The notes below the pieces were generated by a model, which was not told the origin of the DNA, ran no database searches, and saw only the letters and a list, made by a program, of their open reading frames with translations. DNA of 64,000 nt from positions 4,030,001-4,094,000 of the forward strand of contig CATNEN010000025.1 in NCBI GenBank assembly GCA_950097015.1. Reading direction: 5' to 3'. A program made the translations under genes and the position numbers. The stretch is from Macrostomum hystrix. Its lineage: Eukaryota; Animalia; Platyhelminthes. Every line of letters starts with the position of its first letter. Within the stretch, counting starts at the first letter, position 1. This document shows positions 25,501 to 49,632 of the stretch, piece by piece.

Positions 25501-28220
25501 TAGTTTGTTTGGGCCAAGCTCTAGTTCAGAAGCAGCAGTAGCAGCAATATTCGCTGTATCAAATTGCGAAATAAAACAAACTGATAAACTCGAGCAGGAC
25601 TGGGTCTTGGGGCTGAAAAGTGTAGGCCGGCTGAATGCATTTTTTGTATCCATGCAAGTCAGCTACCTTCCCACCAATCTTTTAAGCCATTCGAACTGCA
25701 TTAGTTATTATTTTTATTTTTATAGATTCGCTTTTTTTCGCGTCAGCTCGAGGCAATAACAATGACTGAAGTGGCAATATATGTGTAGCCTGTGTTCTTT
25801 TTTTTGGTTGTTTTTCAATGATTTTCTACAGTTTTGCTGCATCTGTCTCACGCACGCGACCCTCGGTTGTGTGTTTTTGGAAAGCCAATATCGACTGTAA
25901 AATTAGAATATTGCTGTTTTATTAGCTTCTTGTGGCCGTGTCGCATCCAATTCGCACAAAATTAATTCGAATGCCTAACAAACTCGTCAGTAGATTTGAG
26001 GCATCAATCACACCTATGCAGCAGCAGCAGCATGACTATCATCCCATTTTTATGTATATATTAAACATTCCCGACTTAGTTAAAAGCAGAGAGAAAAAGA
26101 GACAGGGTTAAGGTTGAGACTTCCGACACTGGTTTGAGACTGCAACTCCTCACCTAGCAGCTGTCTGTTAGCCGCGTGATTGACAGCTTTGGTTAGCCAT
26201 TCTCAACTGGCTGTGACGAGGTTTCTGTCCAGCAAACTATCAACTTCCCCTCTTGCATTTGTTCTTCTACGGTGAAATTCTGAGTTTTGTTTTACTAGCC
26301 AGCTTTTCATATAATGATGATGGGCGCCAACTAGGCAAAAAACTAGTAGCCTGAGTAGGAAGACTTCGAATCCTCACGAGGGGCCACTTTCTCCTCTCCC
26401 TAAGCTTTTTTCACGGGAAGAAAACATAAAATATATATACTAGTATATGAGATCCCATCCTCACACAAAGGGGACACACACTGAGTGAGTGAGTGAGGGG
26501 CGGAGACCGGAAGCCGCATAGCAACAACAATAGGAAGTTGAAAGAGGCCAAGTCAGGAGAGAATTGAGTAACAGAAGTGGACAAATTCGTGTTAAGATGA
26601 CGGAAAGTGAGAAATAGAGAGAGAGAGAGGATGTAAGACATTGCGTGGAGCCTCGTTTTGGCGTCGCTTCTGCTACTCATTTTTCATCACCTCATTTTTT
26701 CTATATAACTCGGAGCTCTGGAAAACTCCAAATAGAGACCATTTTGCCAGCCTGTTTGACTGACAAGTCGCTGAGGGGGCGGGCGGCGGCGGCGGTGGCG
26801 GCTGGATGGTGGGGTAGCGTGACGTATTTTCTCTTCCTTTCTGTCAGTCTCGCTCCCCTCTACGTGTTTTTAATTTCTCATATGGTTCCCCTACCAACGA
26901 CGATTTTTTTAATAATCAAGAAGAGAGCATCTGGCGAGCATTGAGATTCGAATGCTCTCTATTATCATTTTACGGTTCTAAATCAATAATAAAAATCTTT
27001 CAGCTAACGGACGCGCCTATCAGGAACATTTGACCGCTCAACGGCACCAGCACCAGCGCCAGCACCAGCGCCAGCATCAGCATCAGCAGCACGTGAAGAA
27101 GCCACTAAACGCATTCATGATCTTCATGAAAGAACAGCGGCCAAAAGTGGTGTCCGAATGCACTCTGAAAGAGTCGGCGGCCATCAACCAGATCCTTGGC
27201 CGGCGCTGGCATTCGCTAAGCCGCGAGGAGCAGGCCCGCTATTACGAGCTAGCCCGCCAGGAGAAAGAGCATCACGCCAAGCTTTATCCCAACTGGTCGG
27301 CTAGGGATAACTACGGAGGAATTGCGCGCAAGAGAAAAAAACAGAAACTGCGACTCCTGACACCTGCGGCCAACGGGTCCAGCAGTCTTGTTGGCGGAGG
27401 CGGCGGCGGCGGCTGTCCACCTGATGTTGCTATGGCAACCTGCGGAGTGAGCAGCGCCTCATCTGTTGCTGCTGTTGCTGCTGCTGCTGTTGCTGCGGCA
27501 GCCAATCCCCGCAGCGTCCTGCCCGCCTCGATGATGGGCGCCGTGTCCACGCCTACTTCTGGCGTTTCCGCTGCCGCCGCCGCCCACGCGGCCGCCGCCG
27601 CAGCCGCCGCCGCAGCCGCGGCCGCCTCCGCCGCGAAGAAGTGCCGCGCCGTGTTCGGCCTGGAGCGCCAGGACCTGTGGTGCAAGCCGTGCAAGCGAAA
27701 GAAGAAGTGCGTCAAATTTGCCTCCACCGACGGCTGTGATGCGCAGTCGCAGCTGCTGCCGCCGCGGCATTCGCTGCTTCCGCCGGGACAGGCGTCCCTG
27801 CCTCTGTCGCAGCAGCAGCAGCCGACGCTGCAGCCACCAATAAAGCGGTCGCGTCCGTCAACTCCGTGCAATAGTCACCATCACCATTTAGCCGCAACTA
27901 GCGCCTGCTCTACTAATAGTAGTACAATTCTCAACTGCAACTTTTTCTGCTCGCCCAATGCCGCCGGCTTCGGAGTCGGCGACGATGGCGACGATGGCGA
28001 CGATGAAGAAGACGAAGTTGATGGCGAAGACTATGACGAAGAGGACTACGATGAGGATGGCGAGGGCGAGTGCGACGCCAGCCACGTTCCTGACGGCGAG
28101 GCCGATGCGGCCTTCTCAGACGTCAAGATCAAAGCCTCGCCGGGTTCGCCGAATCCCGCTGAGGACTATTCGCCTTCGCAATGTGCAGCCCTGGAGTCGC
28201 AGGGCACCCCAGCTTGTTGA
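22524..28220 (+). CDS. TCF: TCF/LEF (pangolin-like) HMG-box Wnt effector with C-clamp; exons 22524-23364 and 27004-28220
   Basis: N-terminal beta-catenin-binding motif [18 protein letters not shown] (cf. GDDLGANDELISFKDEGE); HMG box [75 protein letters not shown] plus basic tail RKRKKQK; C-clamp [25 protein letters not shown] (27636-27710). Donor gag|gtaagt at 23365 (phase 1) matches acceptor tttcag|ct at 27003. Extra small exons within the 3.6-kb intron cannot be excluded. Confidence 0.95.
23398..23700. repeat. 16-bp minisatellite in TCF intron
   Basis: Unit tgatcatagagtcagg; starts ~34 nt after the donor. Confidence 0.92.
24975..25230. repeat. GAA/TGA-rich low-complexity repeat in TCF intron
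   Basis: Degenerate gatgaagaatgaa units. Confidence 0.75.
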
Positions 28221-32458: not shown

Positions 32459-35400
32459 ATGTCAGACTCCAGTGGTGGCGGCGCCTCTTCCGCCGCCGCC
32501 AGATACGGCTTCGATGACATTATCAACGAGGACGGTAAGTTGGGATTTTGACTCAATTCATACGGGTAAACTTTTCGTCTATTATTTGATCTCACGAAGC
32601 GAAAACATAATATCGTTTTTTGCAGCTTCAGAATCGCCATTTCAGCAACAGATTCTACCGAGTGTTGAAATAGTTCAATCCAGTTAGTATTTTTGTTTGC
32701 GTGCTGACTGCATTACTAACTGTTTAATTGTTAGGTTAAGGTTTCTGTTGTGTATTGGTTAGGCTAAGGGTTCTGTTGTGTAATGGTTAGGCTAAGGGTT
32801 CTGTTCAAGGACCACTAGTAGATAGTCTACTTGAGTAGTCCGTGGTTCTGTTGTGTAATGGTTAGGCTAAGGGTTCTGTTGTGTAATGGTTAGGCTAAGG
32901 GTTCTGTTGTGTAATGTTTAGGCTAAGGGTTCTGTTGTGTAATGGTTAGGCTAAGGGTTCTGTTGTGTAATGGTTAGGCTAAGGGTTCTGTTGTGTAATG
33001 GTTAGGCTAAGGGTTCTGTTGTGTAATGGTTAGGCTAAGGGTTCTGTTGTGTAATGGTTAGGCTAAGGGTTCTGTTGTGTAATGGTTAGGCTAAGGGTTC
33101 TGTTGTGTAATGGTTAGGCTAAGGGTTCTGTTGTGTAATGGTTAGGCTAAGGGTTCTGTTGTGTAATGGTTAGGCTAAGGGTTCTCTTGTGTAATGGTTA
33201 GGCTAAGGGTTCTCTTGTGTAATGGTTAGGCTAAGGGTTCTCTTGTGTAATGGTTAGGCTAAGCGTTCTGTTGTGTAATGGTTAGGCTAAGGGTTCTGTT
33301 GTGTAATGGTTAGGCTAAGGATTCTGTTGTGTAATGGTTAGGCTAAGGGTTCTGTTGTGTAATGGTTAGGCTAAGGGTTCTGTTGTGTAATGGTTAGGCT
33401 AAGGATTCTGTTGTGTAATGGTTAGGCTAAGGGTTCTCTTGTGTAATGGTTAGGCTAAGCGTTCTGTTGTGTAATGGTTAGGCTAAGGGTTCTGTTGTGT
33501 AATGGTTAGGCTAAGGATTCTGTTGTGTAATGGTTAGGCTAAGGGTTCTGTTGTGTAATGGTTAGGCTAAGGGTTCTCTTGTGTAATGGTTAGGCTAAGC
33601 GTTCTGTTGTGTAATGGTTAGGCTAAGGATTCTGTTGTGTAATGGTTAGGCTAAGCGTTCTGTTGTGTAATGGTTAGGCTAAGCGTTCTGTTGTGTAATG
33701 GTTAGGCTAAGGGTTCTCTTGTGTAATGGTTAGGCTAAGCGTTCTGTTGTGTAATGGTTAGGCTAAGGATTCTGTTGTGTAATGGTTAGGCTAAGCGTTC
33801 TGTTGTGTAATGGTTAGGCTAAGCGTTCTGTTGTGTAATGGTTAGGCTAAGCGTTCTGTTGTTTCTGAGTTAGTTTATGGTGTGAGTTTTTGGTTAATAG
33901 TTCTGGTGTAAAGGCTTTTTTAGGGTTTTGTTGCAATGGTTTATTTATTTGATGTTTTAATAGTTTCTTACTGCAATGTTGCATTCTCTATTTTAAGTAG
34001 GATAATACGAGTTATGTTTGCCGGTTTTTAATGAAACATAGTTTCTTCCGTATTATCTAATATATTCCCCCTAAATGAATAGTGTTATATATGGCAGTAC
34101 AGTCGTACAGACAAGTGTATGAATTCCCGTGTATCAAGAATACTTCACCTTGCAGTTGCTCCGCCAGCTGTTCAATCTCGTTTGCCACCCCCGCATTGAA
34201 TCCCACCGTTTCCTCTCAGCGGTCATATTTAATCTGCCTATTTTTGCAGCGGTGAAGCTTCTTGAAAGCAGGTGCGTCAAATATATTCAATCTACTTCTT
34301 TTAGATCGCGTGCATAAATTCCACCTGAAACGGGTAGAATATGCACTGCCTAGAAATTGTTCTGCCTATTGGTGGCTGACCTTCTTCTGTGGAGTGGAGT
34401 AATAATTTAACTTCTGGGCGATTATTATCAACTGTCCTAGAACTGTCTATACTTTGATGTACTCTCATCTCACTGCCTCTCATCTCACTGTCTCTCATCT
34501 CACTGTCTCTCATCTCACTGTCTCTCATCTCACTGTCTTCCATCTCACTGTCTCTCATCTCACTGTCTCTCATCTCACTGTCTCTCATCTCACTGTCTTC
34601 ATCTCACTGCCTCTTATCTCTCTGCCTCTCATCTCACTGTCTCTCATCTCACTGTCTCTAATCTCACTGCCTCTCATCTCACTGTCTCTCATCTCACTGT
34701 CTCTCATCTCACTGTCTCTCATCTCACTGTCTCTCATCTCACTGTCTCTCATCTCACTGTCTCTCATCTCACTGTCTCTCATCTCACTGCCTCTCATCTC
34801 ACTGTCTCTCATCTCACTGTCTCTCATCTCACTGTCTCTCATCTCACTGTCTCTCATCTCACTGTCTCTCATCTCACTGTCTCTCATCTCACTGTCTCTC
34901 ATCTCACTGTCTCTCATCTCACTGTCTCTCATCTCACTGTCTTCATCTCACTGCCTCTTATCTCTCTGCCTCTCATCTCACTGTCTCTCATCTCACTGCC
35001 TCTGTCACTGCCTCTCATCTCACTGTCCCTCATCTCTCTGCCTCTCATCTCACTGTCTCTCATCTCACTGTCTCTCATCTCACTGCCTCTCATCTCACTG
35101 TCTTCATCTCACTGCCTCTCATCTCACTGTCTCTCATCTCTCTGCCTCTCATCTCACTGTCTCTCATCTCTCTGCCTCTCATCTCACTGCCTCTCATCTC
35201 ACTGTCTCTCATCTCACTGTCTCTCATCTCACTGTCTCTCATCTCACTGCCTCTGTCACTGCCTCTCATCTCACTGTCCCTCATCTCTCTGCCTCTCATC
35301 TCACTGCCTCTCATCTCACTGTCTCTCATCTCACTGTCTCTCATCTCACTGTCTCTCATCTCACTGTCTCTCATCTCTCTGCCTCTCATCTCACTGTCTC

Positions 35401-38400
35401 TCATCTCACTGTCTCTCATCTCTCTGCCTCTCATCTCACTGTCTCTCATCTCACTGTCTCTCATCTCACTGTCTCTCATCTCACTGTCTCTCATCTCACT
35501 GTCTCTCATCTCTCTGCCTCTCATCTCACTGCCTCTCATCTCACTGTCTCTCATCTCACTGTCTCTCATCTCACTGTCTCTCATCTCACTGCCTCTGTCA
35601 CTGCCTCTCATCTCACTGTCCCTCATCTCTCTGCCTCTCATCTCACTGCCTCTCATCTCACTGTCTCTCATCTCACTGTCTCTCATCTCACTGTCTCTCA
35701 TCTCACTGTCTCTCATCTCTCTGCCTCTCATCTCACTGTCTCTCATCTCACTGCCTCTGTCACTGCCTCTCATCTCACTGTCCCTCATCTCTCTGCCTCT
35801 CATCTCACTGTCTCTCATCTCACTGTCTCTCATCTCACTGTCTCTCATCTCACTGCCTCTCATCTCTCTGCCTCTCATCTCTCTGCCTCTCATCTCACTG
35901 CCTCTCATCTCACTGTCCCTCATCTCTCTGCCTCTCATCTCACTGCCTCTCATCTCACTGTCTCTCATCTCACTGTCTCTCATCTCACTGTCTCTCATCT
36001 CACTGTCTCTCATCTCACTGTCTCTCATCTCACTGTCTCTCATCTCACTGTCTCTCATCTCTCTGCCTCTCATCTCACTGTCTCTCATCTCACTGCCTCT
36101 GTCACTGCCTCTCATCTCACTGTCCCTCATCTCTCTGCCTCTCATCTCACTGTCTCTCATCTCACTGTCTCTCATCTCACTGTCTCTCATCTCACTGCCT
36201 CTCATCTCTCTGCCTCTCATCTCTCTGCCTCTCATCTCACTGCCTCTCATCTCACTGCCTCTCATCTCACTGCCTCTCATCTCACTGTCTCTCATCTCAC
36301 TGTCTCTCATCTCACTGTCTCTCATCTCACTGCCTCTCATCTCACTGCCTCTCATCTCACTGTCTCTCATCTCACTGTCTCTCATCTCACTGTCTCTCAT
36401 CTCACTGTCTCTCATCTCACTGCCTCTCATCTCACTGCCTCTCATCTCACTGTCTCTCATCTCACTGTCTCTCATCTCACTGTCTCTCATCTCACTGCCT
36501 CTCATCTCACTGTCTCTCATCTCACTGTCTCTCATCTCACTGTCTCTCATCTCACTGTCTCTCATCTCACTATCTCTCATCTCACTGTCTCTCATCTCAT
36601 TGTCTCTCATCTCACTGTCTCTCATCTCACTGTCTCTCATCTCACTGCCTCTCATCTCTGCCTCTCATCTCTCTGTCCTTATATTCCTCTATCTCCTATC
36701 TCGCAAGTACTAATTGACTTCCTCCGAAGTTGTCTTGACTTTAACCTTCCGTGTCGCTTTGCTTCATAAGAATTCACAATGCTTCAAACAAACTCTCTCT
36801 CTTCACAATTCCTACATTTTCCTACCTTCAATGAATTGGACAAACCTACTCACTTGTACAGACTGAGATCCTACTCCACTGCACTATTTCTATTGGCTTG
36901 CTTGGCTCTCGCCAGCCAGTTATATTGCGCTAGAGCGAACTAAAACTGCATTTATATTTGGATTTTTCACACTGTTCCGTCAGTCAGTAGATTCTCAGTT
37001 AGTAGAAGCTAGACAGGAAGAAATCCTAAAAAAACTAATATACGATACAAAACTGTGACAGCAATGTCAGCTCAGAAGCCTAGCAACTATCGATCTATGG
37101 AGAACTCCGAGATACCACCAAACATAGGACTGCACCAGAGGCTGAGAAATTGTGAATCACCTATCCAACTGTTTAACTACCATAAGTTGCAACTGGTACT
37201 GTAGCTAGAATCTAATCAGGTACTGTAGCTAGAATCTATTCAGGTACTGTAGCTATAATCTAATCAGGTACTGTAGCTAGAATCTATTCAGGTACTGTAG
37301 CTAGAATCTAATCAGGTACTGTAGCTATAATCTAATCAGGTACTGTAGCTAGAATCTAATCAGGTACTGTAGCTAGAATCTAACCAGGTACTGTAGCTAG
37401 AATCTAATCAGGTACTGTAGCTAGAATCTAATCAGGTACTGTAGCTAGAATCTAATCAGGTACTGTAGCTAGAATCAAATCAGGTACTGTAGCTAGAATC
37501 TAATCAGGTACTGTAGCTAGAATCTAATCAGGTACTGTAGCTAGAATCAAATCAGGTACTGTAGCTAGAATCTAATCAGGTACTGTAGCTAGAATCTAAT
37601 CAGGTACTGTAGCTAGAATCTAATCAGGTACTGTAGCTAGAATCTAATCAGGTACTGTAGCTAGAATCTAATCAGGTACTGTAGCTAGAATCTAATCAGG
37701 TACTGTAGCTAGAATCTAATCAGGTACTGTAGCTAGAATCTAATCAGGTACTGTAGCTAGCATAGAAGCTGGTACTATGGCTAGTAGGTACCGCAGGTAG
37801 AATCACTATAGTGTCGAATCTTTTTCAGTGCCCCATTGTCTCATTCTCGTAGCTCACACAAGTCTAGTTTCTGGTTTTGTTACTGGTGTTGGATTATCTT
37901 TTTTGGTTTGGTCTTTGTTGGCTTGAACTGGTGTCTTATTGCCTGGCTCTATTGCCATATATGCCCAATTTTCACTTAATTCCCAACTCACTAGCTACCT
38001 ACAAGAAACCCACATCACAACCTAAACCAAACCAACCTTTCTCCCCGCCCCACCTCACTTATGTGCCCCCACCTCACTCCCTGATCCCACTTCACTCCCA
38101 GCCCCCACCACACTCACTGTTCCCACTTCACTCCCAGCCCCCACCACACTCACTGTTCCCACTTCACTCCCAGCCCCCACGACACTCACTGTTCCCACTT
38201 CACTCCCAGCCCCCACGACCTCACTGTTCCCACTTCACTCCCAGCCCCCACTACACTCACTGTTCCCACTTCACTCCCAGCCCCCACCACACTCACTGTT
38301 CCCACTTCACTCCCAGCCCCACCACACTCACTGTTCCCACTTCACTCCCAGCCCCCACCACACTCACTGTTCCCACTTCACTCCCTGTCCCCAATCGACT

Positions 38401-41400
38401 TCCTGCCTCGATCCCTCTCTGCCCAACTTTAATCCTTGCCCCCGCCTCACTCCCCGCCCCCGCCTCACTCCCCGCCCCCGCCTCACTCCCCGCCCCCGCC
38501 TCACTCCCCACCCCGCCTCACTCCCCGCCCCCGCCTCACTCCCCGCCCCGCCATACTCCCTGCGCCCGCCTCACTCCCCGCCCCCGCCATACTCCCTGCG
38601 CCCGCCATACTCCCTTCCCCAATCTCACTCCAAGCCCCCCACTTCACTCACCTAACTTATCAACTCCCGACTGGCGTCTGCAGATGCTCGCGGACTGCTG
38701 AGCGATGATTTCGATCTTTCTGACGACAGAGGCGCGGGCAGAAAGTCTACCGATTCAACCGCTGACGCCGACGATGACGGCGACGGCGAGACCTACACTG
38801 TGGAGCAGGCTGTGGAGAAGCTGGGCTTTGGTCGATTCCAATTGCGCATTCTCTTTATCTGCGGAATCATGACTGTGAGTGCATTGTACCAAAGCTGGAC
38901 TTCACAATTTCGATTCCTAGTAATTGGATATAGGACAGAAAAATTGCAACCCTAACTTAGGGTTTCCACTCTTTCCAGAATGGACATTCCACTCTTATTG
39001 TCATAGCTCTCCCTCCGTTTTTCTTATTCTTGAATTGAAACAAAAGAAAGCATGAGTTTTTCACTTTGGCTTCTCCTGGTCAAAAAGCTTTATTGTTTGC
39101 TAGCTGTTTTACTGTGACAGCTGTTCCCGATTGTGTGCTAACAAACAATTCTGAGCTTCTAAGCTGCTCAAGTTCCTGCTCTGAAACTCTCGTGTATACC
39201 AATAGTCTATAGTTTGTTTCTAGCCCGAGCCACATTTGCAGTATAGTTAACTGATGGTTTACTAAATCGGTTACTAAGAAGGAGAGAGAGCGATAGAGAG
39301 AAGTAGAGTGAGGAATAGAAGGAGAGGCAGAGAAGTAGAGTGAGGAATAGAAGGAGAGGCAGAGAAGTAGAGTGAGGAATAGAAGGAGAGGCAGAGAAGT
39401 AGAGTGAGGAATAGAAGGAGAGGCAGAGAAGTAGAGTGAGGAATAGAAGGAGAGGCAGAGAAGTAGAGTGAGGAATAGAAGTAGAGGCAGAGAAGTAGAG
39501 TGAGGAATAGAAGGAGAGGCAGAGAAGTAGAGTGAGGAATAGAAGGAGAGGCAGAGAAGTAGAGTGAGGAATAGAAGTAGAGGCAGAGAAGTAGAGTGAG
39601 GAATAGAAGGAGAGCCAGAGAAGTAGAGTGAGGAATAGAAGGAGAGGCAGAGAAGTAAAGTGAGGAATAGAAGGAGAGGCAGAGAAGCAGAGTGAGGAAT
39701 AGAAGGAGAGGCAGAGAAGTAGAGTGAGGAATAGGAGAGGCAGAGAAGTAAAGTGAGGAATAGAAGGAGAGGCAGAGAAGCAGAGTGAGGAATAGAAGGA
39801 GAGGCAGAGAAGTAGAGTGAGGAATAGAAGGAGAGGCAGAGAAGTAAAGTGAGGAATAGAAGGAGAGGCAGAGAAGTAGAGTGAGGAATAGAAGGAGAGG
39901 CAGAGAAGTAAAGTGAGGAATAGAAGGAGAGGCAGAGAAGTAGAGTGAGGAATAGAAGGAGAGGCAGAGAAGTAAAGTGAGGAATAGAAGGAGAGGCAGA
40001 GAAGTAAAGTGAGGAATAGAAGGAGAGGCAGAGAAGCAGAGTGAGGAATAGAAGATTCGCAGAGTCTGGTGGTAGGCAAAGCTGCAGCTGATGGTTGTGC
40101 TAATCAGCCAAGTGCTGTGTGAAGCAAGAATCTGCCGTACCAGGCACTCCAAAGTGCTACTTACACTAGTAGTAACTAGAAGCCGAAACTAACAAACCAA
40201 AAACAGGCAGCAGATGCCATGGAGATGCTGCTTCTGTCAGTGCTGGGTCCGGCTCTGCGCTGCGATTGGCGACTCACCTCCGCCCAGGTGGCTGTCATCA
40301 CCACCGTGGTCTTCGCCGGCATGTTCGTCGGCGCGCCGTCCTGGGGCGCCGTATCCGACAAGCACGGCAGGAGGGGCGTGTTCGGTCTCAGCCTATGCCT
40401 GATTGCCTATTTCGGCCTGCTGTGTTCATTTTCGCCCAGTTTCACCTGGCTAGTGACCCTGCGCGGCCTTGTTGGCTTCTGCATCAGCGGGGCGGCTTCG
40501 TCTTTCACGCTGCTATCCGAGTACCTGCCCCAGGCCTACAGAGCCAAAGTACTCATCATCTACAATGTGTTCTGGGGCATTGGCAGCTCGTTTGAGGTGC
40601 TGCTGGCTTATCTGGTACTGCCAACCTTGGGCTGGCGTTACCTCACCGCCTTTTCAGCTCTGCCACTGTTCCTCTTCACCCTGGCACTGGGGGTGAGTGC
40701 GGCTTGGGGTGTGACTGCAGATTTGGGTGTGACTGCAGATTTGGGTGTGACTGCTGATTTGGGTGTGACTGCTGATTTGGGTGTGACTGCAGATTTGGGT
40801 GTGACTGCAGATTTGGGTGTGACTTGTAATTGGCTTGTAATTGGTAGTTGGGGTGTGAATTGGGAATCAGAATTGAGTAGGGATCAGGATGTGAGTAGGG
40901 ATCAGGGTGTGAGTGTGAATCATGATGAGTAGGGATCAGGGTGTGAGTAGGAATCAGGATGTGAGTAGGAATCAGGATGTGAGTAGGAATCAGGGTGTGA
41001 GTGTGAATCACGATGAGTAGGGATCAAGGTGTGAGTGAGGATCAGGGTTTGAGTAGGGATCAGGGTGTGAGTAGGAATCAGGATGTGAGTAGGAATCAGG
41101 ATGTGAGTAGGGATCAGGGTGTGAGTGTGAATCACGATGAGTAGGGATCAGGGTGTGAGTGTGAATCACGATGCGTAGGGATTAGGGTGTGAGTTGAGAC
41201 AGTGGGGCTTGGTAAGGTTTTTGATTGAATTACATCAGCAGAATCTCTCTGAGAATCCAACTCACTCGCAGTTTCTGCCAGAGTCGGCGAGGTATCTGCT
41301 GGCGTCGGGCCAGACTCGAAAAGCGGCCGCCATCATCGACCAGATCGCCCGTGACAACCGGAAGCCGCCGATGACCGGCCGGCCAGTGGCTGCCGATGTC

Positions 41401-44400
41401 ACAGAGGCAAGTGACCTTTTTTGTCATTTTAAAACTATCTCAACTCAACTGAACTTATCTTCCGTTGCAGTCGGACCGGGGCACCATCTGGTCTTTGTTC
41501 CATCACAGCTATCGTCGCACCACCCTGACGCTATTCTTCATGTGGTTCGGTGTAGCCTTCCTTTACTATGGCATTGTGCTGATTAGCACCGAGATCTTCC
41601 ACTTCCACAGCGACTGCTATGGCACCTCGCAGGTCACGGTAAGGCCGGTGAAGGATCAGGGGATTAGTGACAGCACTCTGAAGGACTAGGGGATTAGAGA
41701 CAGCACTCTGAAGGATTAGGGGATTAGTGACAGCACTCTGAAGGATCAGGGGATTAGTGTCAGCACTCTGAAGGATCAGGGGATTAGTGACAGCACTCTG
41801 AAGGATCAGGGGATTAGTGACAGCACTCTGAAGGATCAGGGGATTAGTTACAGCACTCTGAAGGACTAGGGGATTAGTGTCAGCACTCTGAAGGACTAGG
41901 GGATTAGTGACAGCACTCTGAAGGACTAGGGGATTAGTGACAGCACTCTGAAGGATCAGGGGATTAGTGACAGCACTCTGAAGGACTAGGGGATTAGTGT
42001 CAGCACTCTGAAGGACTAGGGGATTAGTGACAGCACTCTGAAGGATCAGGGGATTAGTGACAGCACTCTGAAGGATCAGGGGATTAGTGACAGCACTCTG
42101 AAGGATCAGGGGATTAGTTACAGCACTCTGAAGGACTAGGGGATTAGTGACAGCACTCTGAAGGACTAGGGGATTAGTAACAGCACTCTGAAGGATCAGG
42201 GGATTAGTTACAGCACTCTGAAGGACTAGGGGATTAGTGTCAGCACTCTGAAGGACTAGGGGATTAGTGACAGCACTCTGAAGGACTAGGGGATTAGTGA
42301 CAGCACTCTGAAGGACTAGGGGATTAGTGTCAGCCCTCTGAAGGACTAGGGGATTAGTGACAGCACTCTGAAGGATCAGGGGATTAGTGACAGCACTCTG
42401 AAGGATCAGGGGATTAGTGACAGCACTCTGAAGGATCAGGGGATTAGTGACAGCACTCTGAAGGACTAGGGGATTAGTGTCAGCACTCTGAAGGACTAGG
42501 GGATTAGTGTCAGCACTCTGAAGGATCAGGGGATTAGTGTCAGCACTCTGAAGGACTAGGGGATTAGTGTCAGCACTCTGAAGGATCAGGGGATTAGTGA
42601 CAGCACTCTGAAGGATCAGGGGATTAGTGACAGCACTCTGAAGGATCAGGGGATTAGTTACAGCACTCTGAAGGACTAGGGGATTAGTGTCAGCACTCTG
42701 AAGGACTAGGGGATTAGTGTCAGCACTCTGAAGGACTAGGGGATTAGTGTCAGCACTCTGAAGGACTAGGGGATTAGTGACAGCACTCTGAAGGACTAGG
42801 GGATTAGTGACAGCACTCTGAAGGACTAGGGGATTAGTGACAGCACTCTGAAGGATCAGGGGATTAGTGACAGCACTCTGAAGGACTAGGGGATTAGTGT
42901 CAGCACTCTGAAGGACTAGGGGATTAGTGACAGCACTCTGAAGGACTAGGGGATTAGTGACAGCACTCTGAAGGACTAGGGGATTAGTGACAGCACTCTG
43001 AAGGATCAGGGGATTAGTGACAGCACTCTGAAGGACTAGGGGATTAGTGTCAGCACTCTGAAGGACTAGGGGATTAGTGTCAGCACTCTGAAGGACTAGG
43101 GGATTAGTGACAGCACTCTGAAGGACTAGGGGATTAGTGACAGCACTCTGAAGGATCAGGGGATTAGTGACAGCACTCTGAAGGACTAGGGGATTAGTGA
43201 CAGCACTCTGAAGGATCAGGGGATTAGTGACAGCACTCTGAAGGACTAGGGAGTTAGTGTCAGCACTCTGAAGGACTAGGGGATTAGTGACAGCACTCTG
43301 AAGGATCAGGGGATTAGTGACAGCACTCTGAAGGACTAGGGGATTAGTGACAGCACTCTGAAGGATCAGGGGATTAGTGACAGCACTCTGAAGGATCAGG
43401 GGATTAGTGACAGCACTCTGAAGGATCAGGGGATTAGTGACAGCACTCTGAAGGACTAGGGGATTAGTGACAGCACTCTGAAGGACTAGGGGATTAGTGT
43501 CAGCACTCTGAAGGACTAGGGGATTAGTGTCAGCACTCTGAAGGATCAGGGGATTAGTGTCAGCACTCTGAAGGATCAGGGGATTAGTGTCAGCACTCTG
43601 AAGGATCAGGGGATTAGTGTCAGCACTCTGAAGGATCAGGGGATTAGTGTCAGCACTCTGAAGGATCAGGGGATTAGTGTCAGCACTCTGAAGGATCAGG
43701 GGATTAGTGACAGCACTCTGAAGGATCAGGGGATTAGTGACAGCACTCTGAAGGATCAGGGGATTAGTGACAGCACTCTGAAGGACTAGGGGATTAGTGA
43801 CAGCACTCTGAAGGACTAGGGGATTAGTGCCAGCACTCTGAAGGACTAGGGGATTAGTGCCAGCACTCTGAAGGACTAGGGGATTAGTGTCAGCACTCTG
43901 AAGGACTAGGGGATTATTGTCAGCACTCTGAAGGACTAGGGGATTAGTGTCAGCACTCTGAAGGACTAGGGGATTAGTGCCAGCACTCTGAAAAATCAGG
44001 AGATTAATTTCCGTGCTGTTAAGGATCATGGGATTAGTGACAGCGCTGTAAAGGATCAGTGGTCAAGGATCAAGGATCAGGGATTAGTAACAGCACTGTG
44101 AAGTATCAGGGGGATATTTCAGCAGTATTGGAGGTTTTTTATCCCCAAAAACGCCTTCAAGGTGGGTCACAACGCCACAGAGATTGTCTCGGATGATTCC
44201 TGCTGCCGCAGTCTGCAGCCGGACGACTACAAGGCGATGCTGATTTCTTCATTCGGCGAATTCGTCATCATTCCATTTAACCTCATCACAATTGACGCCC
44301 TGGGCCGTCGCTGGACAATGGCTATTAACTACGGCCTCACCGGCTTATTCTTCGGCCTGACCTACCTGTGCGTGCCAAAGGCGGCCACAACAGCCTTCTT

Positions 44401-45831
44401 GTTCATGATCAGGGCGCATGCGTCAGGCATATTTAACACCATCTACATCTATACTGTGGAGGTGGGCTGCTGGTGTCATGGAGCCTGATACCAATAATAC
44501 ATTTGTTACTAGCTAGGCCACATGAAAAATCTGTTTAGTTTCTTAGAATGCTTTTGAAAAGTGAAAAATCGACATAATCCAATCAGAATCTACCCAAATC
44601 TACCAAAATCTACTGAATCGAATCAGAATCTACCCAAATCTACCAAAATCTACTGAATCGAATCAGAATCTGCCAAAACCTACTAAAATCTACTAAATCG
44701 AATCAGAATCTACCCAAATCTACCAAAATCTACTGAATCGAATCAGAATCTACCAAAACCTACCAAAATCTACTGAATTGAATCATAATCTACCAAAACC
44801 TACCAAAATCTACTGAATCGAATCAGAATCTACCCAAATCTACCAAAATCTACTGAATCGAATCAAAATCTACCCAAATCTATCAAAATCTACTGAATCG
44901 AATCAGAATCTACCAAAACCTACCAAAATCTACTGAATCGAATCAGAATCTACCAAAACCTACCAAAATCTACTGAATCGAATCAGAATCTACCAAAACC
45001 TACCAAAATCTACTAAATCGAATCAGAATCTACCAAAACCTACTAAAATCTACTGAATCGAATCAGAATCTGCCAAAACCTACTAAAATCTACTAAATCG
45101 AATCAGAATCTACCAAAACCTACTAAAATCTACTAAATCGAATCAGAATCTACCAAAACCTACTAAAATCTACTAAATCGAATCAGAATCTACCAAAACC
45201 TACCAATATGTACTAAATCGAATCAGGATCTACCCAAATCTACCAAAATCTACTGAATCCAATCAGAATCTAATAAAAATCTAATAAAATCTACCAAAAC
45301 CAACAGAATCTACCAAAATCTACAAAATCCAATCAGAATCTACCAAAATCTACAAAATCCAATCAGAATCTACCTGAATCTACAAAATGCAATCAGAATC
45401 TACCAAAATCTACAAAATGCAATCAGAATCTACCAAAATCTACAAAATCCAATCTGAATCTACCCGAATCTACCTCCCATTTGCAGGTCTACCCAACTGT
45501 AGTGCGCAGCATCGGTCTCGGCATCTGTTCGTCTATGGCCCGACTCGGCTCCATGTCAACGCCATTCGTAGCCCAGGTGCTCATGCCTGACGTCAGCGTG
45601 TTTCTAGCCTTCTGCATCTACGTTGTCGTTGCCCTACTTTGTACCGGACTGTCGCTGCTTCTGCCGATTGAAACTCGCGGCCGGGCGATGCCGCAGAGTC
45701 TGACCGAGGCGGCCGAAGCTGCGGCCAAGGCCGATCCGGACGTTGTCGCCTACAGGACCGGTAGCGAGGCTGGCGAAGGTCGAGGCGCCACAGCTGAGAT
45801 TCGCATGCAGAGTCGCTCGGGTGATGGCTAG
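32459..45831 (+). CDS. SVOP: Synaptic vesicle 2-related (SVOP/SVOPL-like) MFS transporter, 7 exons, 566 aa
   Basis: Exons 32459-32534, 38684-38874, 40207-40692, 41272-41406, 41471-41638, 44162-44461, 45487-45831 total 1701 nt with all phases matching. Motifs: YTVEQAVEKLGFGRFQ, ADAMEM, WGAVSDKHGRR (MFS loop motif), LSEYLP, PESARY, YYGIVLISTEIF, EVYPTVVRSIGLG, LPIETRGRAM. Intron 4 is GC-AG. Confidence 0.93.
32735..33862. repeat. 28-bp minisatellite (~40 copies), SVOP intron 1
   Basis: Unit gttctgttgtgtaatggttaggctaagg; period 28 at 33001/33029. Confidence 0.97.
34462..36675. repeat. 15-bp satellite (~145 copies), SVOP intron 1
   Basis: Unit tctcatctcactgtc; source of the SHLTV and MRDSE pseudo-ORFs. 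Confidence 0.97.
37192..37762. repeat. 24-bp minisatellite (~23 copies), SVOP intron 1
   Basis: Unit caggtactgtagctagaatctaat. Confidence 0.96.
38085..38640. repeat. C-rich 36-bp then 18-bp minisatellites, end of SVOP intron 1
   Basis: Units cactcactgttcccacttcactcccagcccccacca (38085-38390) and cccccgcctcactccccg (38440-38640). Confidence 0.9.
39290..40055. repeat. 32-bp purine-rich minisatellite (~24 copies), SVOP intron 2
   Basis: Unit gaggaatagaaggagaggcagagaagtagagt. Confidence 0.96.
40705..41195. repeat. Two 18-bp minisatellites filling SVOP intron 3
   Basis: gggtgtgactgcagattt (40705-40825) and gtgagtagggatcagggt (40870-41195). Confidence 0.92.
41648..44105. repeat. 30-bp satellite (~80 copies) filling SVOP intron 5
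   Basis: Unit aaggactaggggattagtgacagcactctg; source of the QSAVTNPLIL pseudo-ORF. Confidence 0.98.
44575..45475. repeat. 40-bp (grading into 30-bp) repeat of aatctac-based 10-mers, SVOP intron 6
   Basis: Unit aatcagaatctacccaaatctaccaaaatctactgaatcg; 30-mer after ~45300. Confidence 0.94.
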
Positions 45832-47129: not shown

Positions 47130-47700
47130 AGAGGGAGGGTGGAGTGAAGTAAAGTGAGAGTGAGAGTGGAGTAGAGAGAAAGGATGGAGTAGAGAGAGGG
47201 CGGAGAGAGAGGGTGGAGAGAGAGGGTGGAGTAGAGAGAAGGTGGAGAGAGAGGGTGGAGAGAGAGGGTGGAGAGAGAGGGTGGAAAGAGAGGGTGGAGA
47301 GAGAGGGTGGAGTAGAGAGAGGGTGGAGAGAGAGGGTGGAGAGAGAGGGTGGAGAGAGAGGGTGGAGAGAGAGGGTGGAGAGAGAGGGTGGAGAGAGAGG
47401 GTTGAGTAGAGAGAGGGTGGAGTAGAGAGAGGGTGGAGTAGAGAGAGGGCGGAGAGAGAGGGTGGAGAGAGAGGGTGGAGAGAGAGGGTGGAGAGAGAGG
47501 GTGGAGAGAGAGGGTGGAGAGAGAGGGTGGAGAGAGAGGGTTGAGTAGAGAGAGGGTGGAGTAGAGAGAGGGCGGAGAGAGAGGGTGGAGAGAGAGAGTG
47601 GAGAGAGAGGGTGGAGAGAGAGGGTGGAGTAGAGAAAGGATGGAGTAGAGAGAGGCCGTACAGGGAGAGGGCAGAGTGCAGGAGAGAATGAGAGGGAGAG
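47130..47700. repeat. GA-rich simple repeat
   Basis: (gagagagagggtg)n variants. Confidence 0.92.
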
Positions 47701-47836
47701 AGCAGAAATCCGTAGTAGATTATTAAATTTCCGTTTCACGTGAAACAGTCAGCAGCTTACAACCCGTGTCAGCCTATGTATTCAGTTTCAGTGTCCAACA
47801 AACAGCCAGTGCGCTAATCTCTCCTAGTAGCAGACA

Positions 47837-48082
47837 ATGCAAATGCGCTGGTCCCGCATAGCCAGCAACCTGCTGGTGTTCGGCTTCGGCTTCGCCTGCG
47901 GCTACGCGGCGTACGCCGGCAGGCTGAAATTCCTGCGCTGGCGGCAGGACCGGCTGGCCAGGAAGCTGGGCTCCGTGCGCGACCAGCTGCGGCGGGCCAC
48001 GGGCGAGACAACGGCTGCTGCGGCTGCGGCAGCGGCGGCGATTCGTCGAGCCGGCGATCCATCAGACGGGTTTCCGCTCTGA
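47837..48082 (+). CDS. MTLN: Mitoregulin (MTLN/MOXI/MPM)-like microprotein, 81 aa
   Basis: LLVFGFGFACGYAAYAGRLKFLRWRQDRLARKLGSVRDQL aligns without gaps to human MTLN as I recall it (VLVAFASGVLLGWQANRLRRRYLDWRKRRLQDKLAATQKKL): F-x2-G-x3-G-[WY] TM motif and [YF]-L-x-W-R-x2-R-L-x2-K-L. GC-rich coding island; acceptor tagcag| 3 nt before the ATG. Confidence 0.75.
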   Translation: MQMRWSRIASNLLVFGFGFACGYAAYAGRLKFLRWRQDRLARKLGSVRDQLRRATGETTAAAAAAAAAIRRAGDPSDGFPL

Positions 48083-48149
48083 TTGCGCTGCGACTTGTTG
48101 ATGACTGAATGGAGGCTGGAGAAAGAGGGCAAAGTTTTTAGAGAATGGC

Positions 48150-48345
48150 GAGGGAGTACATGGCAAAGAAGTACACGGGTAGGATTAGGGAGTACAGGGG
48201 AGGATTTAATGTACACGGGTAGGATCAGGGAGTACACGGGGAGGATTAGGGAGTACACGGGGAGGATTAGGGAGTACACGGGGAGGATTAGGGAGTACAC
48301 GGGGAGGATTAGGGAGTACACTGTGAGTATTAGGGAGTACCCGGT
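48150..48345. repeat. 21-bp minisatellite
   Basis: Unit gggagtacacggggaggatta. Confidence 0.9.
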
Positions 48346-48660
48346 GTGGAACTGGGAGCATTCGGTTGCGAGGACTGTAAACTAAGTGGCTATAAAAAAA
48401 TATTCGAATAGCTGTTGACCTTCGATTTTTTCAATGTGTTAATGTACTGTTCCACTTAGTTTTTTACTTTGTTTGTGTATGTTTTTATTTGTTTTCTTAA
48501 ATCCTCATGCCCTATATAAAAATATACAGTTTTTTGTTCGAAGATGCTTTTTTAAGTGTTTTTGCACAAAATCGACTTATTGTTGTCGTTTGTTAGGCAC
48601 ACAATTTTAGATGAAAAAAGCGTTTTACACTGCTTATACTCGTAATTAAAACGCTTTAAG

Positions 48661-49632
48661 GCTGCCGACTCAACATCAAAGCATCAGCAGCAGCCGCAGC
48701 CGCCGCTCAGTCCAGCGGACCAGCAGCGTCTGCGCCAGCTCACCGCCTACATCGACGATGCAGTCGGCGCACCGCCAGCCTCGGGCAAGAACCGAGGAAA
48801 ACCCGGTTCCAGCGCCACCGCCAAGTCTTCGGCGATTTCTTCTACGGCCGCCGCGGCAGCCGAGCGCGCCGTCCAGCTGGCCTCACAGCTGAGCCGCGCC
48901 GGCCACTCGGGCCGCCTTCGTCAGCTGGCCGACACCGCCCTGGCCGGCGCTAGGCGACGCGCCTGCGCCTACCTGGTCGGCGCTCTAAGCGGCGACTTTC
49001 TGCGCGCTGTTGTGATGGCCTGTCGGCGGCATCGCCAGTCGGTGGGCGTTCTGGAAGCCGCGCTGGAGCTGTCGCTAATCGATACGGCGAATGCCGAATT
49101 TCGCAACGAGGTGCTCGGCTTCCGTCCGTTGGCCGACGCCCTGCGACAGCTCTTGGCCGACATAGTGGCCGCTGAGCACGCTGCCAGCGCTGCCGAGGCC
49201 AACCGGCTGCGCGCTCTCTGCGACTCGCTCGCCTCGATTGACGCCTTCGACTCGCTGGTGCTGGAGCCGCATCTCCGGCCACGGCTAGTCGCCGAATTCG
49301 CCGCTTTGGCCGAGTCGCTGCTCGCCACCTCAGCAAACGCCGCCGCCTACTTAAGCGCCGTACGGGACGCCGTCGAGCGAGTCGCCGAGAGGGTCGGCCG
49401 GTGCTATCGACCGGAGGCGGCGAGGTCTGTATTCGCAATGGCCGCCGATGCAATGGTGCGAGCCCACTGGACCACATGCGTTCAGCTGCTGGCTGGCGAC
49501 TTGCGCGACTCTGACACTGCCGACACCCTTCTGGGCGTCTGCCGCTCGCTGCCTGGCGAGTTCGGAGCTCCTCAGCTGCTGGCGGAGGCGGCCTTGTCGG
49601 CTGGGGTTCCGCTCCCCTCCAACCTGGGCTGA
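48661..49632 (+). CDS. Divergent cullin-3-like protein, N-terminal cullin repeats only (323 codons, no genomic ATG at exon start)
   Basis: Frame open from acceptor ctttaag|GCT GCC GAC to TGA at 49630. Collinear similarity to CUL3 helical repeats as recalled: [29 protein letters not shown] / [56 protein letters not shown] / [50 protein letters not shown] / [23 protein letters not shown]. Confidence 0.75.
   Translation, partial: [323 protein letters not shown]

What the first reader, a model, noticed from the sequence alone, without database searches (positions are those of the whole stretch)
47837..48082. Mitoregulin-like mitochondrial microprotein in an invertebrate (probable flatworm) genome
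Seen: an 81-codon GC-rich ORF between two repeat blocks, with one glycine-rich TM helix followed by a basic amphipathic helix. Recalled knowledge: mitoregulin (LINC00116/MTLN, 56 aa; regulates respiration and fatty-acid oxidation) is usually described as a vertebrate/chordate microprotein. My hand alignment is gap-free over ~45 aa with ~15 identities, including F-x2-G-x3-G-[WY] and [YF]L-x-WR-x2-RL-x2-KL. Inference: a deeply conserved orthologue that annotation would probably miss because of its size, here with an Ala-rich C-terminal extension.
Basis: partly seen in the sequence, partly recalled or inferred. Interest (0 to 1): 0.8.

Follow-up and report, generated by a model that had tools for sequence, protein, structure and literature searches.

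The report
Flatworm mitoregulin microprotein gene
This small unannotated gene in a Macrostomum-like flatworm encodes a true relative of mitoregulin, a mitochondrial microprotein that reviews describe as vertebrate-only, although public protein databases already hold insect, mollusc and Macrostomum lignano members.

Summary
An 81-codon ORF at 47837-48082 (+) has 69.5% GC and lies between two tandem-repeat blocks. It encodes one transmembrane helix followed by a basic helix.

- The ORF passes Pfam MTLN (PF22002) above its curated cut-off (30.9 bits against 27).
- A profile of the two flatworm sequences, run against 1.84 billion proteins, returned PF22002 members as its three best outside hits.
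- An HMM built only from 17 non-flatworm members scores the ORF at 50-51 bits. The best of 10,000 shuffles scores 17.8, and the next-best of 1,287 six-frame segments of the window scores 5.
- BLASTP against a shark mitoregulin-like protein gives 15/40 identities with no gaps. hhalign against seven shark sequences gives 94.8% probability.
- The gene sits in conserved order with Macrostomum lignano: sugar transporter, MTLN, then a 311-aa gene. DNA conservation is confined to the ORF, and dN/dS is about 0.35.
- About 385-nt contigs covering the whole ORF occur in four public runs, but their library type is not on record.

Novelty is modest. Reviews say invertebrates lack the gene, yet UniProt already names an insect protein Mitoregulin. 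The M. lignano homologue carries a precomputed PF22002 hit, and the ESM Atlas holds a mollusc-labelled cluster. Mitochondrial location and function are inferred, not shown.

The parts
47837..48082 (+). Intronless ORF of 81 codons plus stop, encoding the mitoregulin-family microprotein.
   Evidence: Searches give the coordinates. Pfam PF22002 scores 30.9 bits against a cut-off of 27. The non-flatworm MTLN HMM scores 50-51 bits, and this is the only hit among 1,287 six-frame segments of the window.
47843..47845 (+). Second in-frame ATG (Met3), the position that aligns with the start codon of the M. lignano homologue. It is an alternative initiation site that would give 79 aa.
   Evidence: Alignment. 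DNA conservation with L003/L004 begins exactly here. The first ATG has A at -3, read.
47858..47914 (+). Transmembrane helix, residues 8-26, carrying the family-invariant F15-x2-G18-F19-x2-G22-Y23 face.
   Evidence: Hydropathy. Invariant columns. Helix in the AF2 model, with block-mean pLDDT 79-89 over residues 1-30.
47915..47998 (+). Basic juxtamembrane helix, residues 27-54 (net charge +8), with the conserved R29, FL-x-WR, R39-L40 and K43-L44 positions.
48002..48079 (+). Flatworm-specific C-terminal extension, residues 56-81, with a run of nine alanines followed by IRR. It is partly conserved in M. lignano and absent from the shark and insect sequences compared and from the 59-aa (mollusc-labelled) group.
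   Evidence: Alignments. DNA conservation runs to 48039. Model confidence is lower here, pLDDT 51-72.
47843..48039 (+). The only block around the ORF that aligns with the M. lignano loci at the DNA level (82% identity). Both flanks are unalignable.
   Evidence: blastn. Flanks compared.
47702..48168 (.). Extent of the 383-394-nt contigs found in four public runs of one study: 47785-48168 in three runs and 47702-48085 in one. They are co-linear with the genome, have no joints and show 0-1 differences.
   Evidence: The library type is not on record, so this is only consistent with a short unspliced transcript.
47191..47635 (.). Upstream flanking tandem repeat (13-bp unit, 32.5 copies). This is context, not part of the gene.
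48170..48344 (.). Downstream flanking tandem repeat (21-bp unit, 8.4 copies), 88 nt after the stop. It may lie in the 3' UTR.
   Evidence: Three of the four contigs end at its edge.
41270..45820 (+). Syntenic upstream neighbour: exons of an MFS sugar-transporter gene.
   Evidence: blastn and tblastx against L003/L004 give 74-91% amino-acid identity. The Pfam families Sugar_tr and MFS_1 hit the M. lignano gene model.
48646..49632 (+). Syntenic downstream neighbour: homologue of an M. lignano 311-aa gene with no Pfam family.
   Evidence: tblastn gives 65% identity over 311 aa in one frame, 48706-49629.

Best explanation
The ORF is a real, intronless protein-coding gene for a mitoregulin-family (Pfam PF22002) microprotein in a Macrostomum-like flatworm. 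It is homologous to vertebrate MTLN. By inference from the vertebrate protein, the N-terminal moderately hydrophobic helix anchors it in a mitochondrial membrane. Recent work places vertebrate MTLN in the outer membrane with a cytosolic tail, while earlier work placed it in the inner membrane. The strongly basic helix that follows would lie at the membrane surface. There it would bind anionic lipid such as cardiolipin, or partner enzymes of fatty-acid metabolism and respiration. The residues conserved from flatworm to shark are the F-x2-G-x3-G-[YW] face of the membrane helix and the R...[FY]L-x-W[RK]-x2-RL-x2-KL pattern of the basic helix. I therefore take helix-helix packing in the membrane and the interfacial basic helix to be the functional core. 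The Ala-rich tail is a flatworm addition of unknown role. Homology, conservation and gene order are shown. Translation, location and function are inferred.
For: Pfam MTLN scores E 2.6e-7 and 30.9 bits, above the cut-off of 27, with ORF residues 12-51 matching profile positions 14-53 of 56. A profile of the two flatworm sequences searched against 1.84 billion representatives gave P0002, P0003 and P0004 as the best non-self hits (E 3e-6 to 5e-5). All three are strong PF22002 members at 50-55 bits. An HMM built from 17 non-flatworm members scores the ORF at 50.2-51.2 bits. The next-best of 1,287 six-frame segments of the window scores 5 bits. The maximum of 5,000 global shuffles is 14.3 bits, and of 5,000 shuffles kept within the N-terminal, TM and basic segments 17.8 bits. 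BLASTP against shark mitoregulin-like P0070 gives 15/40 identities, no gaps, E 1e-6. hhalign of the flatworm pair against seven shark sequences gives 94.8% probability and E 4.9e-8 over 41 ungapped columns. Gene order matches M. lignano. DNA conservation is limited to 47843-48039, inside the ORF. dN/dS is 0.33-0.37, with differences by codon position of 6/6/13-14. The TM hydropathy (1.38) and the +8 tail charge match the shark protein (1.43, +8). Contigs covering the whole ORF occur in four runs. Functional background comes from PMC11920140, PMC10469944 and PMC13019689.
Against: The aligned core is only about 40 residues and has a simple architecture (a TM helix plus a basic helix). The Pfam score clears the cut-off by only 4 bits. 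The dN/dS estimate rests on 53 codons and about 25 differences. There is no evidence of translation or localisation. The four runs holding the sequence have no recorded library type. The protein is 25 residues longer than the vertebrate form. In vertebrates the function and even the sub-mitochondrial location are themselves contested, so functional transfer is weak.
Confidence: 0.88

Rival explanations
1. It is a chance ORF in GC-rich DNA whose resemblance to mitoregulin comes only from composition: any hydrophobic stretch followed by an Arg/Lys-rich stretch.
For: GC-rich DNA yields long ORFs easily. Overlapping ORFs of 82 and 139 aa lie on the opposite strand. The ORF and other family members also hit the bacterial LapA domain weakly, which has a similar layout. 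The flatworm profile also picked up two unrelated ankyrin-repeat proteins at E 1e-4.
Against: Segment-preserving shuffles reach at most 17.8 bits against 51.2 for the real sequence. The ORF is conserved at the syntenic site in M. lignano while its flanks are not. There is an excess of third-position differences. The invariant positions F15, G18, G22, L40 and L44 hold across 38 sequences without gaps.
Confidence: 0.03
2. It is a genuine conserved flatworm membrane microprotein and a PF22002 homologue, but it has diverged in function. It may not be mitochondrial, or may not act on respiration or fatty-acid oxidation, with the Ala-rich tail giving a lineage-specific role.
For: Identity to the shark protein is only 38% over 40 residues. 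There is a 25-residue extension absent from vertebrate, insect and mollusc-type members. The N-terminal flank is positively charged (+2) where the shark, insect and P0003 forms are negative. The function is disputed even in mammals.
Against: The features thought to govern targeting are retained: a low-hydrophobicity N-terminal TM helix and a strongly basic flank (PMC10469944). The conserved residues are the same as in vertebrates.
Confidence: 0.08
3. The ORF is not an independent gene but an upstream reading frame or first cistron of the transcript of the downstream 311-aa gene, which lies on the same strand and starts about 620 nt further on.
For: The two are on the same strand and close together. 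The downstream gene has no ATG of its own near its conserved start. Flatworms use spliced-leader trans-splicing and operons (general knowledge).
Against: The M. lignano annotation calls them as separate genes. An AATAAA lies about 100 nt after the M. lignano stop codon (sequence printed). The contigs in the runs end at 48085-48170 rather than running on, although the repeat at 48170 could explain that. Even if they are co-transcribed, the ORF would still encode the conserved protein.
Confidence: 0.1

Closest known systems
Vertebrate mitoregulin (MTLN / LINC00116 / MOXI / MPM / SMIM37), 56 aa; compared here with shark sequences P0070-P0076
   Same: Both have an N-terminal single-pass helix with F-x2-G-x3-G-[YW]. 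The following basic helix carries [FY]L-x-WR-x2-RL-x2-KL. The tail charge is +8 in both, and the TM hydropathy is similarly low. The alignment is gap-free with 15/40 identities.
   Different: The flatworm protein is 81 aa rather than 56, with an Ala-rich C-terminal extension. Its N-terminal flank is basic rather than acidic. It comes from a flatworm. Location and function are untested.
Macrostomum lignano hypothetical protein BOX15_Mlig017727g1 / Mlig028526g1 (UniProt A0A267EAQ4), 89 aa
   Same: It is the nearest relative, with 83% identity over the core. It lies in the same gene order and has the same Ala-rich extension and a precomputed PF22002 hit.
   Different: It starts at the position of Met3 of the window ORF and has a longer, different C-terminal end. 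Non-coding flanks are not alignable, so the window comes from another species or an old duplicate region.
Invertebrate PF22002 members: Rhynocoris fuscipes (assassin bug) A0AAW1CQJ0, named Mitoregulin in UniProt; a 59-aa ESM Atlas cluster labelled Mollusca; a 77-aa group from run assemblies of unknown taxa
   Same: They share the same invariant core columns and score 78-117 bits against the profile that includes the flatworm sequences.
   Different: Identity to the window ORF is only 28-45%. The 59-61-aa forms have no extension. The 77-aa group has a different extension ending in RRLLREAL.
Bacterial LapA domain (PF06305)
   Same: It has a similar layout of a membrane helix followed by a basic helix. 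Hits are weak and sub-threshold (E 0.21 for the ORF, about 1e-3 for other family members).
   Different: Scores of 12-19 bits fall well below the cut-off of 28. This is not a membership claim and is probably a shared simple architecture.

Membership tests
Mitoregulin (MTLN, Pfam PF22002) | Match to the family profile above the curated gathering score | tested here: met
   30.9 bits against a cut-off of 27, E 2.6e-7, covering profile positions 14-53 of 56.
Mitoregulin (MTLN, Pfam PF22002) | In an unbiased search, the nearest relatives outside its own lineage are family members | tested here: met
   The flatworm-only profile searched against 1.84 billion proteins gave three best outside hits that score 50-55 bits on PF22002. 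All 46 hits of the wider profile carry PF22002.
Mitoregulin (MTLN, Pfam PF22002) | Direct significant similarity to proteins named mitoregulin in vertebrates | tested here: met
   BLASTP against a shark protein gives E 1e-6 and 15/40 identities with no gaps. hhalign gives 94.8% probability and E 4.9e-8.
Mitoregulin (MTLN, Pfam PF22002) | The similarity is not explained by composition or by the TM-plus-basic layout | tested here: met
   51.2 bits against maxima of 14.3 and 17.8 in 2 x 5,000 shuffles. The ORF is the only hit in the window.
Mitoregulin (MTLN, Pfam PF22002) | Architecture: a microprotein with one N-terminal membrane helix (small-x3-small motif) and a C-terminal basic helix | tested here: met
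   The TM helix is residues 8-26 and the tail carries +8. AF2 models a single helix over residues 3-72. At 81 aa it is longer than the 56-aa vertebrate form, but the family members found here range from 56 to 95 aa.
Mitoregulin (MTLN, Pfam PF22002) | The reading frame is maintained by selection | tested here: met
   There is a syntenic intact ORF in M. lignano. Conservation is confined to the ORF, dN/dS is 0.33-0.37 and the third-position excess is 6/6/13-14. The sample is small (53 codons).
Mitoregulin (MTLN, Pfam PF22002) | Transcribed and translated | tested here: inconclusive
   Contigs of 383-394 nt covering the ORF occur in four runs of one study, but the library type is not on record and contigs cannot show strand or translation.
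Mitoregulin (MTLN, Pfam PF22002) | Localisation to a mitochondrial membrane | not testable with these tools
   This needs a tagged protein or fractionation. Only the targeting-like features (a low-hydrophobicity TM helix and a basic flank) are seen.
Mitoregulin (MTLN, Pfam PF22002) | Role in respiration or fatty-acid metabolism, and binding of cardiolipin, CPT1B, CYB5B or CYB5R3 | not testable with these tools
   Known only for mammals (PMC10469944, PMC11920140, PMC13019689).
Mitoregulin (MTLN, Pfam PF22002) | One-to-one orthology with the vertebrate gene (phylogeny or shared gene order with vertebrates) | not tested
   The core is too short for a reliable tree, and no eukaryotic genome collection was available for synteny with vertebrates.
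LapA domain (PF06305) | Match above the curated gathering score | tested here: not met
   12 bits against a cut-off of 28, E 0.21.

The most novel reading that the evidence does not exclude
Mitoregulin is not a vertebrate or chordate invention. It is an ancient bilaterian microprotein, present in flatworms, molluscs, insects and vertebrates, with the same membrane-helix face and basic helix kept throughout. This contradicts the current review literature.
Probability: 0.8. Interest if true: 0.5.

Novelty: new member of a known kind. Interest (0 to 1): 0.4.

Why it matters
[quoted passage not shown] This locus, its M. lignano counterpart and the insect and mollusc members found here show that the family predates the split between protostomes and deuterostomes. 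The residues kept across that distance are a small-x3-small face of the membrane helix and a fixed pattern in the basic helix. They point to which parts of this contested protein matter. A flatworm model could offer a simple setting in which to test localisation and function. The significance is limited because automatic annotation (Pfam/UniProt) already labels several invertebrate proteins as mitoregulin.

Tried and rejected
- **Single-sequence word search:** it found only the M. lignano protein and could not reach further.
- **PDB sequence search:** it found nothing meaningful. The best hit had E 0.27 and was an unrelated aminotransferase. No solved mitoregulin chain was matched.
- **ESM Atlas search with the ORF itself:** scores of 0.79-0.81 are too low to count as more than a lead.
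- **Ankyrin-repeat hits:** two proteins (P0005, P0006) matched the flatworm profile at E about 1e-4. I rejected them as repeat-driven matches to an LKWLRDP-like motif.
- **Organisms of the metagenome and run-assembly members:** I tried contig look-ups (P0026, P0011) and three cluster look-ups. They gave only sample or assembly accessions (ERZ27257293, SRR5248864, GCA_015689235.1), no organism names and no informative neighbours.
- **One broad literature query:** it was uninformative.
- **Mentions of insects in mitoregulin papers:** these concern freezing injury, not homologues.
- **Fold search:** I ran none, because a single long helix cannot discriminate between families.
- **Family tree:** I built none, because 40 alignable residues cannot resolve orthology.

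Full report
**What is there**

The window holds an ATG-to-TGA reading frame of 81 codons at 47837-48082 on the + strand. An in-frame TAG lies two codons upstream, so the frame cannot be extended at its 5' end without splicing. The ORF has 69.5% GC and 80.5% GC at third positions. The window as a whole has 44.8% and the immediate flanks about 48%.

The ORF sits between a 13-bp tandem array (47191-47635) and a 21-bp array (48170-48344). The most hydrophobic 19-residue window is residues 8-26, with mean Kyte-Doolittle 1.38, and residues 8-27 hold three glycines. The next 28 residues carry a net charge of +8. AlphaFold2, given a 38-sequence alignment, models one continuous helix over residues 3-72, with mean pLDDT 77 that is highest over residues 11-50. 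The last 26 residues are Ala-rich.

ORF length by itself means little here. Overlapping ORFs of 82 and 139 aa lie on the other strand of the same GC-rich stretch.

**Is it a mitoregulin relative?**

Five independent lines say yes.

1. Pfam's MTLN model (PF22002) matches at E 2.6e-7 and 30.9 bits, above the curated cut-off of 27. ORF residues 12-51 align to profile positions 14-53 of 56.
2. I built a profile from only the window ORF and its nearest relative and ran it against 1.84 billion representative proteins with no word filter. The three best outside hits had E 3e-6 to 5e-5 for the whole library. Each is a strong PF22002 member at 50-55 bits. The two remaining hits are ankyrin-repeat proteins, which I treat as spurious.
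3. I built an HMM from 17 family members that excludes both flatworm sequences.
   - It scores the ORF at 50.2-51.2 bits.
   - The next-best of all 1,287 stop-to-stop segments of the window scores 5 bits.
   - 5,000 global shuffles reach at most 14.3 bits.
   - 5,000 shuffles that keep the N-terminal, membrane and basic segments in place reach at most 17.8 bits.
   - Composition and layout therefore do not explain the match.
4. A wider profile search returned 46 proteins, all carrying PF22002. They include an assassin-bug protein that UniProt names Mitoregulin (A0AAW1CQJ0). They also include a shark protein whose 90% cluster holds RefSeq entries named mitoregulin or mitoregulin-like from eight shark species.
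5. BLASTP of the ORF against the shark protein gives 15/40 identities, no gaps and E 1e-6. hhalign of the flatworm pair against seven shark sequences gives 94.8% probability and E 4.9e-8 over 41 ungapped columns.

F15, G18, G22, L40 and L44 are invariant across 38 aligned sequences. F19, Y23 and R29 are nearly so, as is an Arg in the W-R-x-D-R stretch.

**Is it a gene under selection?**

The nearest relative is an 89-aa hypothetical protein of Macrostomum lignano, encoded at two near-identical loci of assembly GCA_002269645.1. Comparing those loci with the window shows the same gene order on the same strand:

- exons of an MFS sugar transporter (window 41270-45820, 74-91% amino-acid identity);
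- the mitoregulin ORF;
- a gene for a 311-aa protein without a Pfam family (48706-49629, 65% identity).

Around the ORF, the only alignable DNA is 47843-48039. That block starts at the codon matching the M. lignano start and ends within the tail. Upstream and downstream sequences are unrelated. Over the 53 gap-free codons there are 25-26 differences, distributed 6/6/13-14 by codon position. dN/dS is 0.33-0.37. The sample is small but points to selection on the + frame.

The window differs from both M. lignano copies far more than they differ from each other (93-95% identical, including intergenic DNA). It therefore comes from another Macrostomum-like species or from an old duplicated region. 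The exact 81-aa sequence is not in the 15-billion-protein collection, so it has not been called as a gene there.

**Expression**

Four public runs from one study hold the stretch. Each has a single contig of 383-394 nt that is co-linear with the genome and shows 0-1 differences. Three cover 47785-48168 or a few bases more or less at the right end. One covers 47702-48085 and is preceded by eight letters, TCCGATCT, that I recognise as the end of an Illumina adapter (my own knowledge, not a tool result).

Three of the contigs stop on the right at the edge of the 21-bp repeat. On the left, all four stop in unique sequence 50-135 nt before the ATG. Each run totals only about 40-48 million letters of contigs. 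That would fit a transcriptome better than a genome, but the library type is not on record. I count this only as consistent with a short unspliced transcript.

**How it most likely works (inferred)**

In mammals, mitoregulin is a mitochondrial membrane microprotein with an N-terminal membrane helix and a basic C-terminal part.

- Its location is disputed. Early work placed it in the inner membrane. A 2023 study using several methods placed it in the outer membrane, with the tail in the cytosol and insertion depending on MTCH2 (PMC10469944; PMC11920140).
- It is reported to bind cardiolipin and to interact with CPT1B, CYB5B, CYB5R3 and others.
- It affects fatty-acid metabolism and respiration.

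The flatworm protein keeps what the 2023 study links to mitochondrial targeting: a membrane helix of low hydrophobicity (1.38, against 1.43 in shark). It also has the same +8 tail charge as the shark protein. What is conserved from flatworm to shark is one face of the membrane helix with two small residues four apart, plus a fixed pattern in the basic helix. I therefore propose that it anchors in a mitochondrial membrane and packs against another helix, either its own or a partner's. The basic helix would be presented at the membrane surface. None of this is shown for the flatworm protein. The Ala-rich tail is shared with M. lignano, absent from the other groups, and has no assigned role.

**Comparison with what is known, and novelty**

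[quoted passage not shown] A 2019 paper calls it conserved in chordates. I found no paper that combines mitoregulin with Bilateria. The papers that mention insects or Drosophila do so for other reasons, as far as I checked.

Databases tell a different story:

- the M. lignano protein has a precomputed PF22002 hit;
- an insect protein is named Mitoregulin in UniProt;
- the ESM Atlas has a 54-member cluster of 59-aa proteins named as the mitoregulin family, whose two members of known phylum are labelled Mollusca.

I classify the locus as a new member of a known kind.

**Limits**

- The alignable core is about 40 residues, so orthology in the strict sense cannot be shown.
- Most invertebrate-type relatives come from metagenomes or run assemblies without organism names. 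The taxonomic range rests on one insect, one flatworm genus and an Atlas cluster label.

Noticed in passing
window 48646-49632 (+): The downstream syntenic gene is one open frame of 328 codons. Its first Met is at residue 124 (49015), yet similarity to the M. lignano 311-aa gene starts at about residue 21 (48706). The M. lignano gene model also begins without Met. The start codon must therefore come from an upstream exon or a spliced leader, as another first-stage note (s1-402530) suggested.
   Followed up: partly
window 41270-45820 (+): These are exons of an MFS sugar-transporter gene, conserved with M. lignano at 74-91% amino-acid identity. The 832-aa ORF on the opposite strand (41531-44029) lies almost wholly in the gap between two of the conserved exon blocks (41641 to 44162). 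It gives only low-complexity Pfam hits (Extensin-like and others), so it looks like translated repeat DNA.
   Followed up: partly
window 27030-28220 (+): An ORF of 396 aa has a clear HMG-box domain (Pfam PF00505, E 4e-21), probably an exon of a transcription-factor gene.
   Followed up: no
window 34454-36769 (+): A 771-aa ORF hits decapeptide and pentapeptide repeat models and lies in a region of extreme GC skew (-0.59). This is most likely a translated tandem repeat, not a gene.
   Followed up: no
window 48009-48042: In each of the four runs, a second and longer contig (1.1-1.4 kb) matches only the GCN run that encodes the alanine stretch, with three mismatches. This is an unrelated sequence sharing an Ala-coding repeat, and it inflates apparent depth there.
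   Followed up: no
window 47702: In run X3 the contig starts at 47702 and is preceded by the letters TCCGATCT, which I recognise as the end of an Illumina adapter. Fragments may begin at this position, which would make it a possible transcript 5' end 135 nt before the ATG.
   Followed up: no
proteins P0002, P0003 (relatives from other sources): Mitoregulin-family members repeatedly give weak sub-threshold hits (E about 1e-3, 18-19 bits) to the bacterial LapA domain PF06305. That domain has the same layout of a membrane helix followed by a basic helix. This is probably convergence of a simple layout.
   Followed up: no
L003 and L004 (M. lignano NIVC01000240.1 and NIVC01002444.1): The two M. lignano loci are 93-95% identical including intergenic DNA, and they encode identical mitoregulin-like proteins. 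L004 also carries a roughly 1-kb unit repeated many times downstream (about 88% identity between copies).
   Followed up: no
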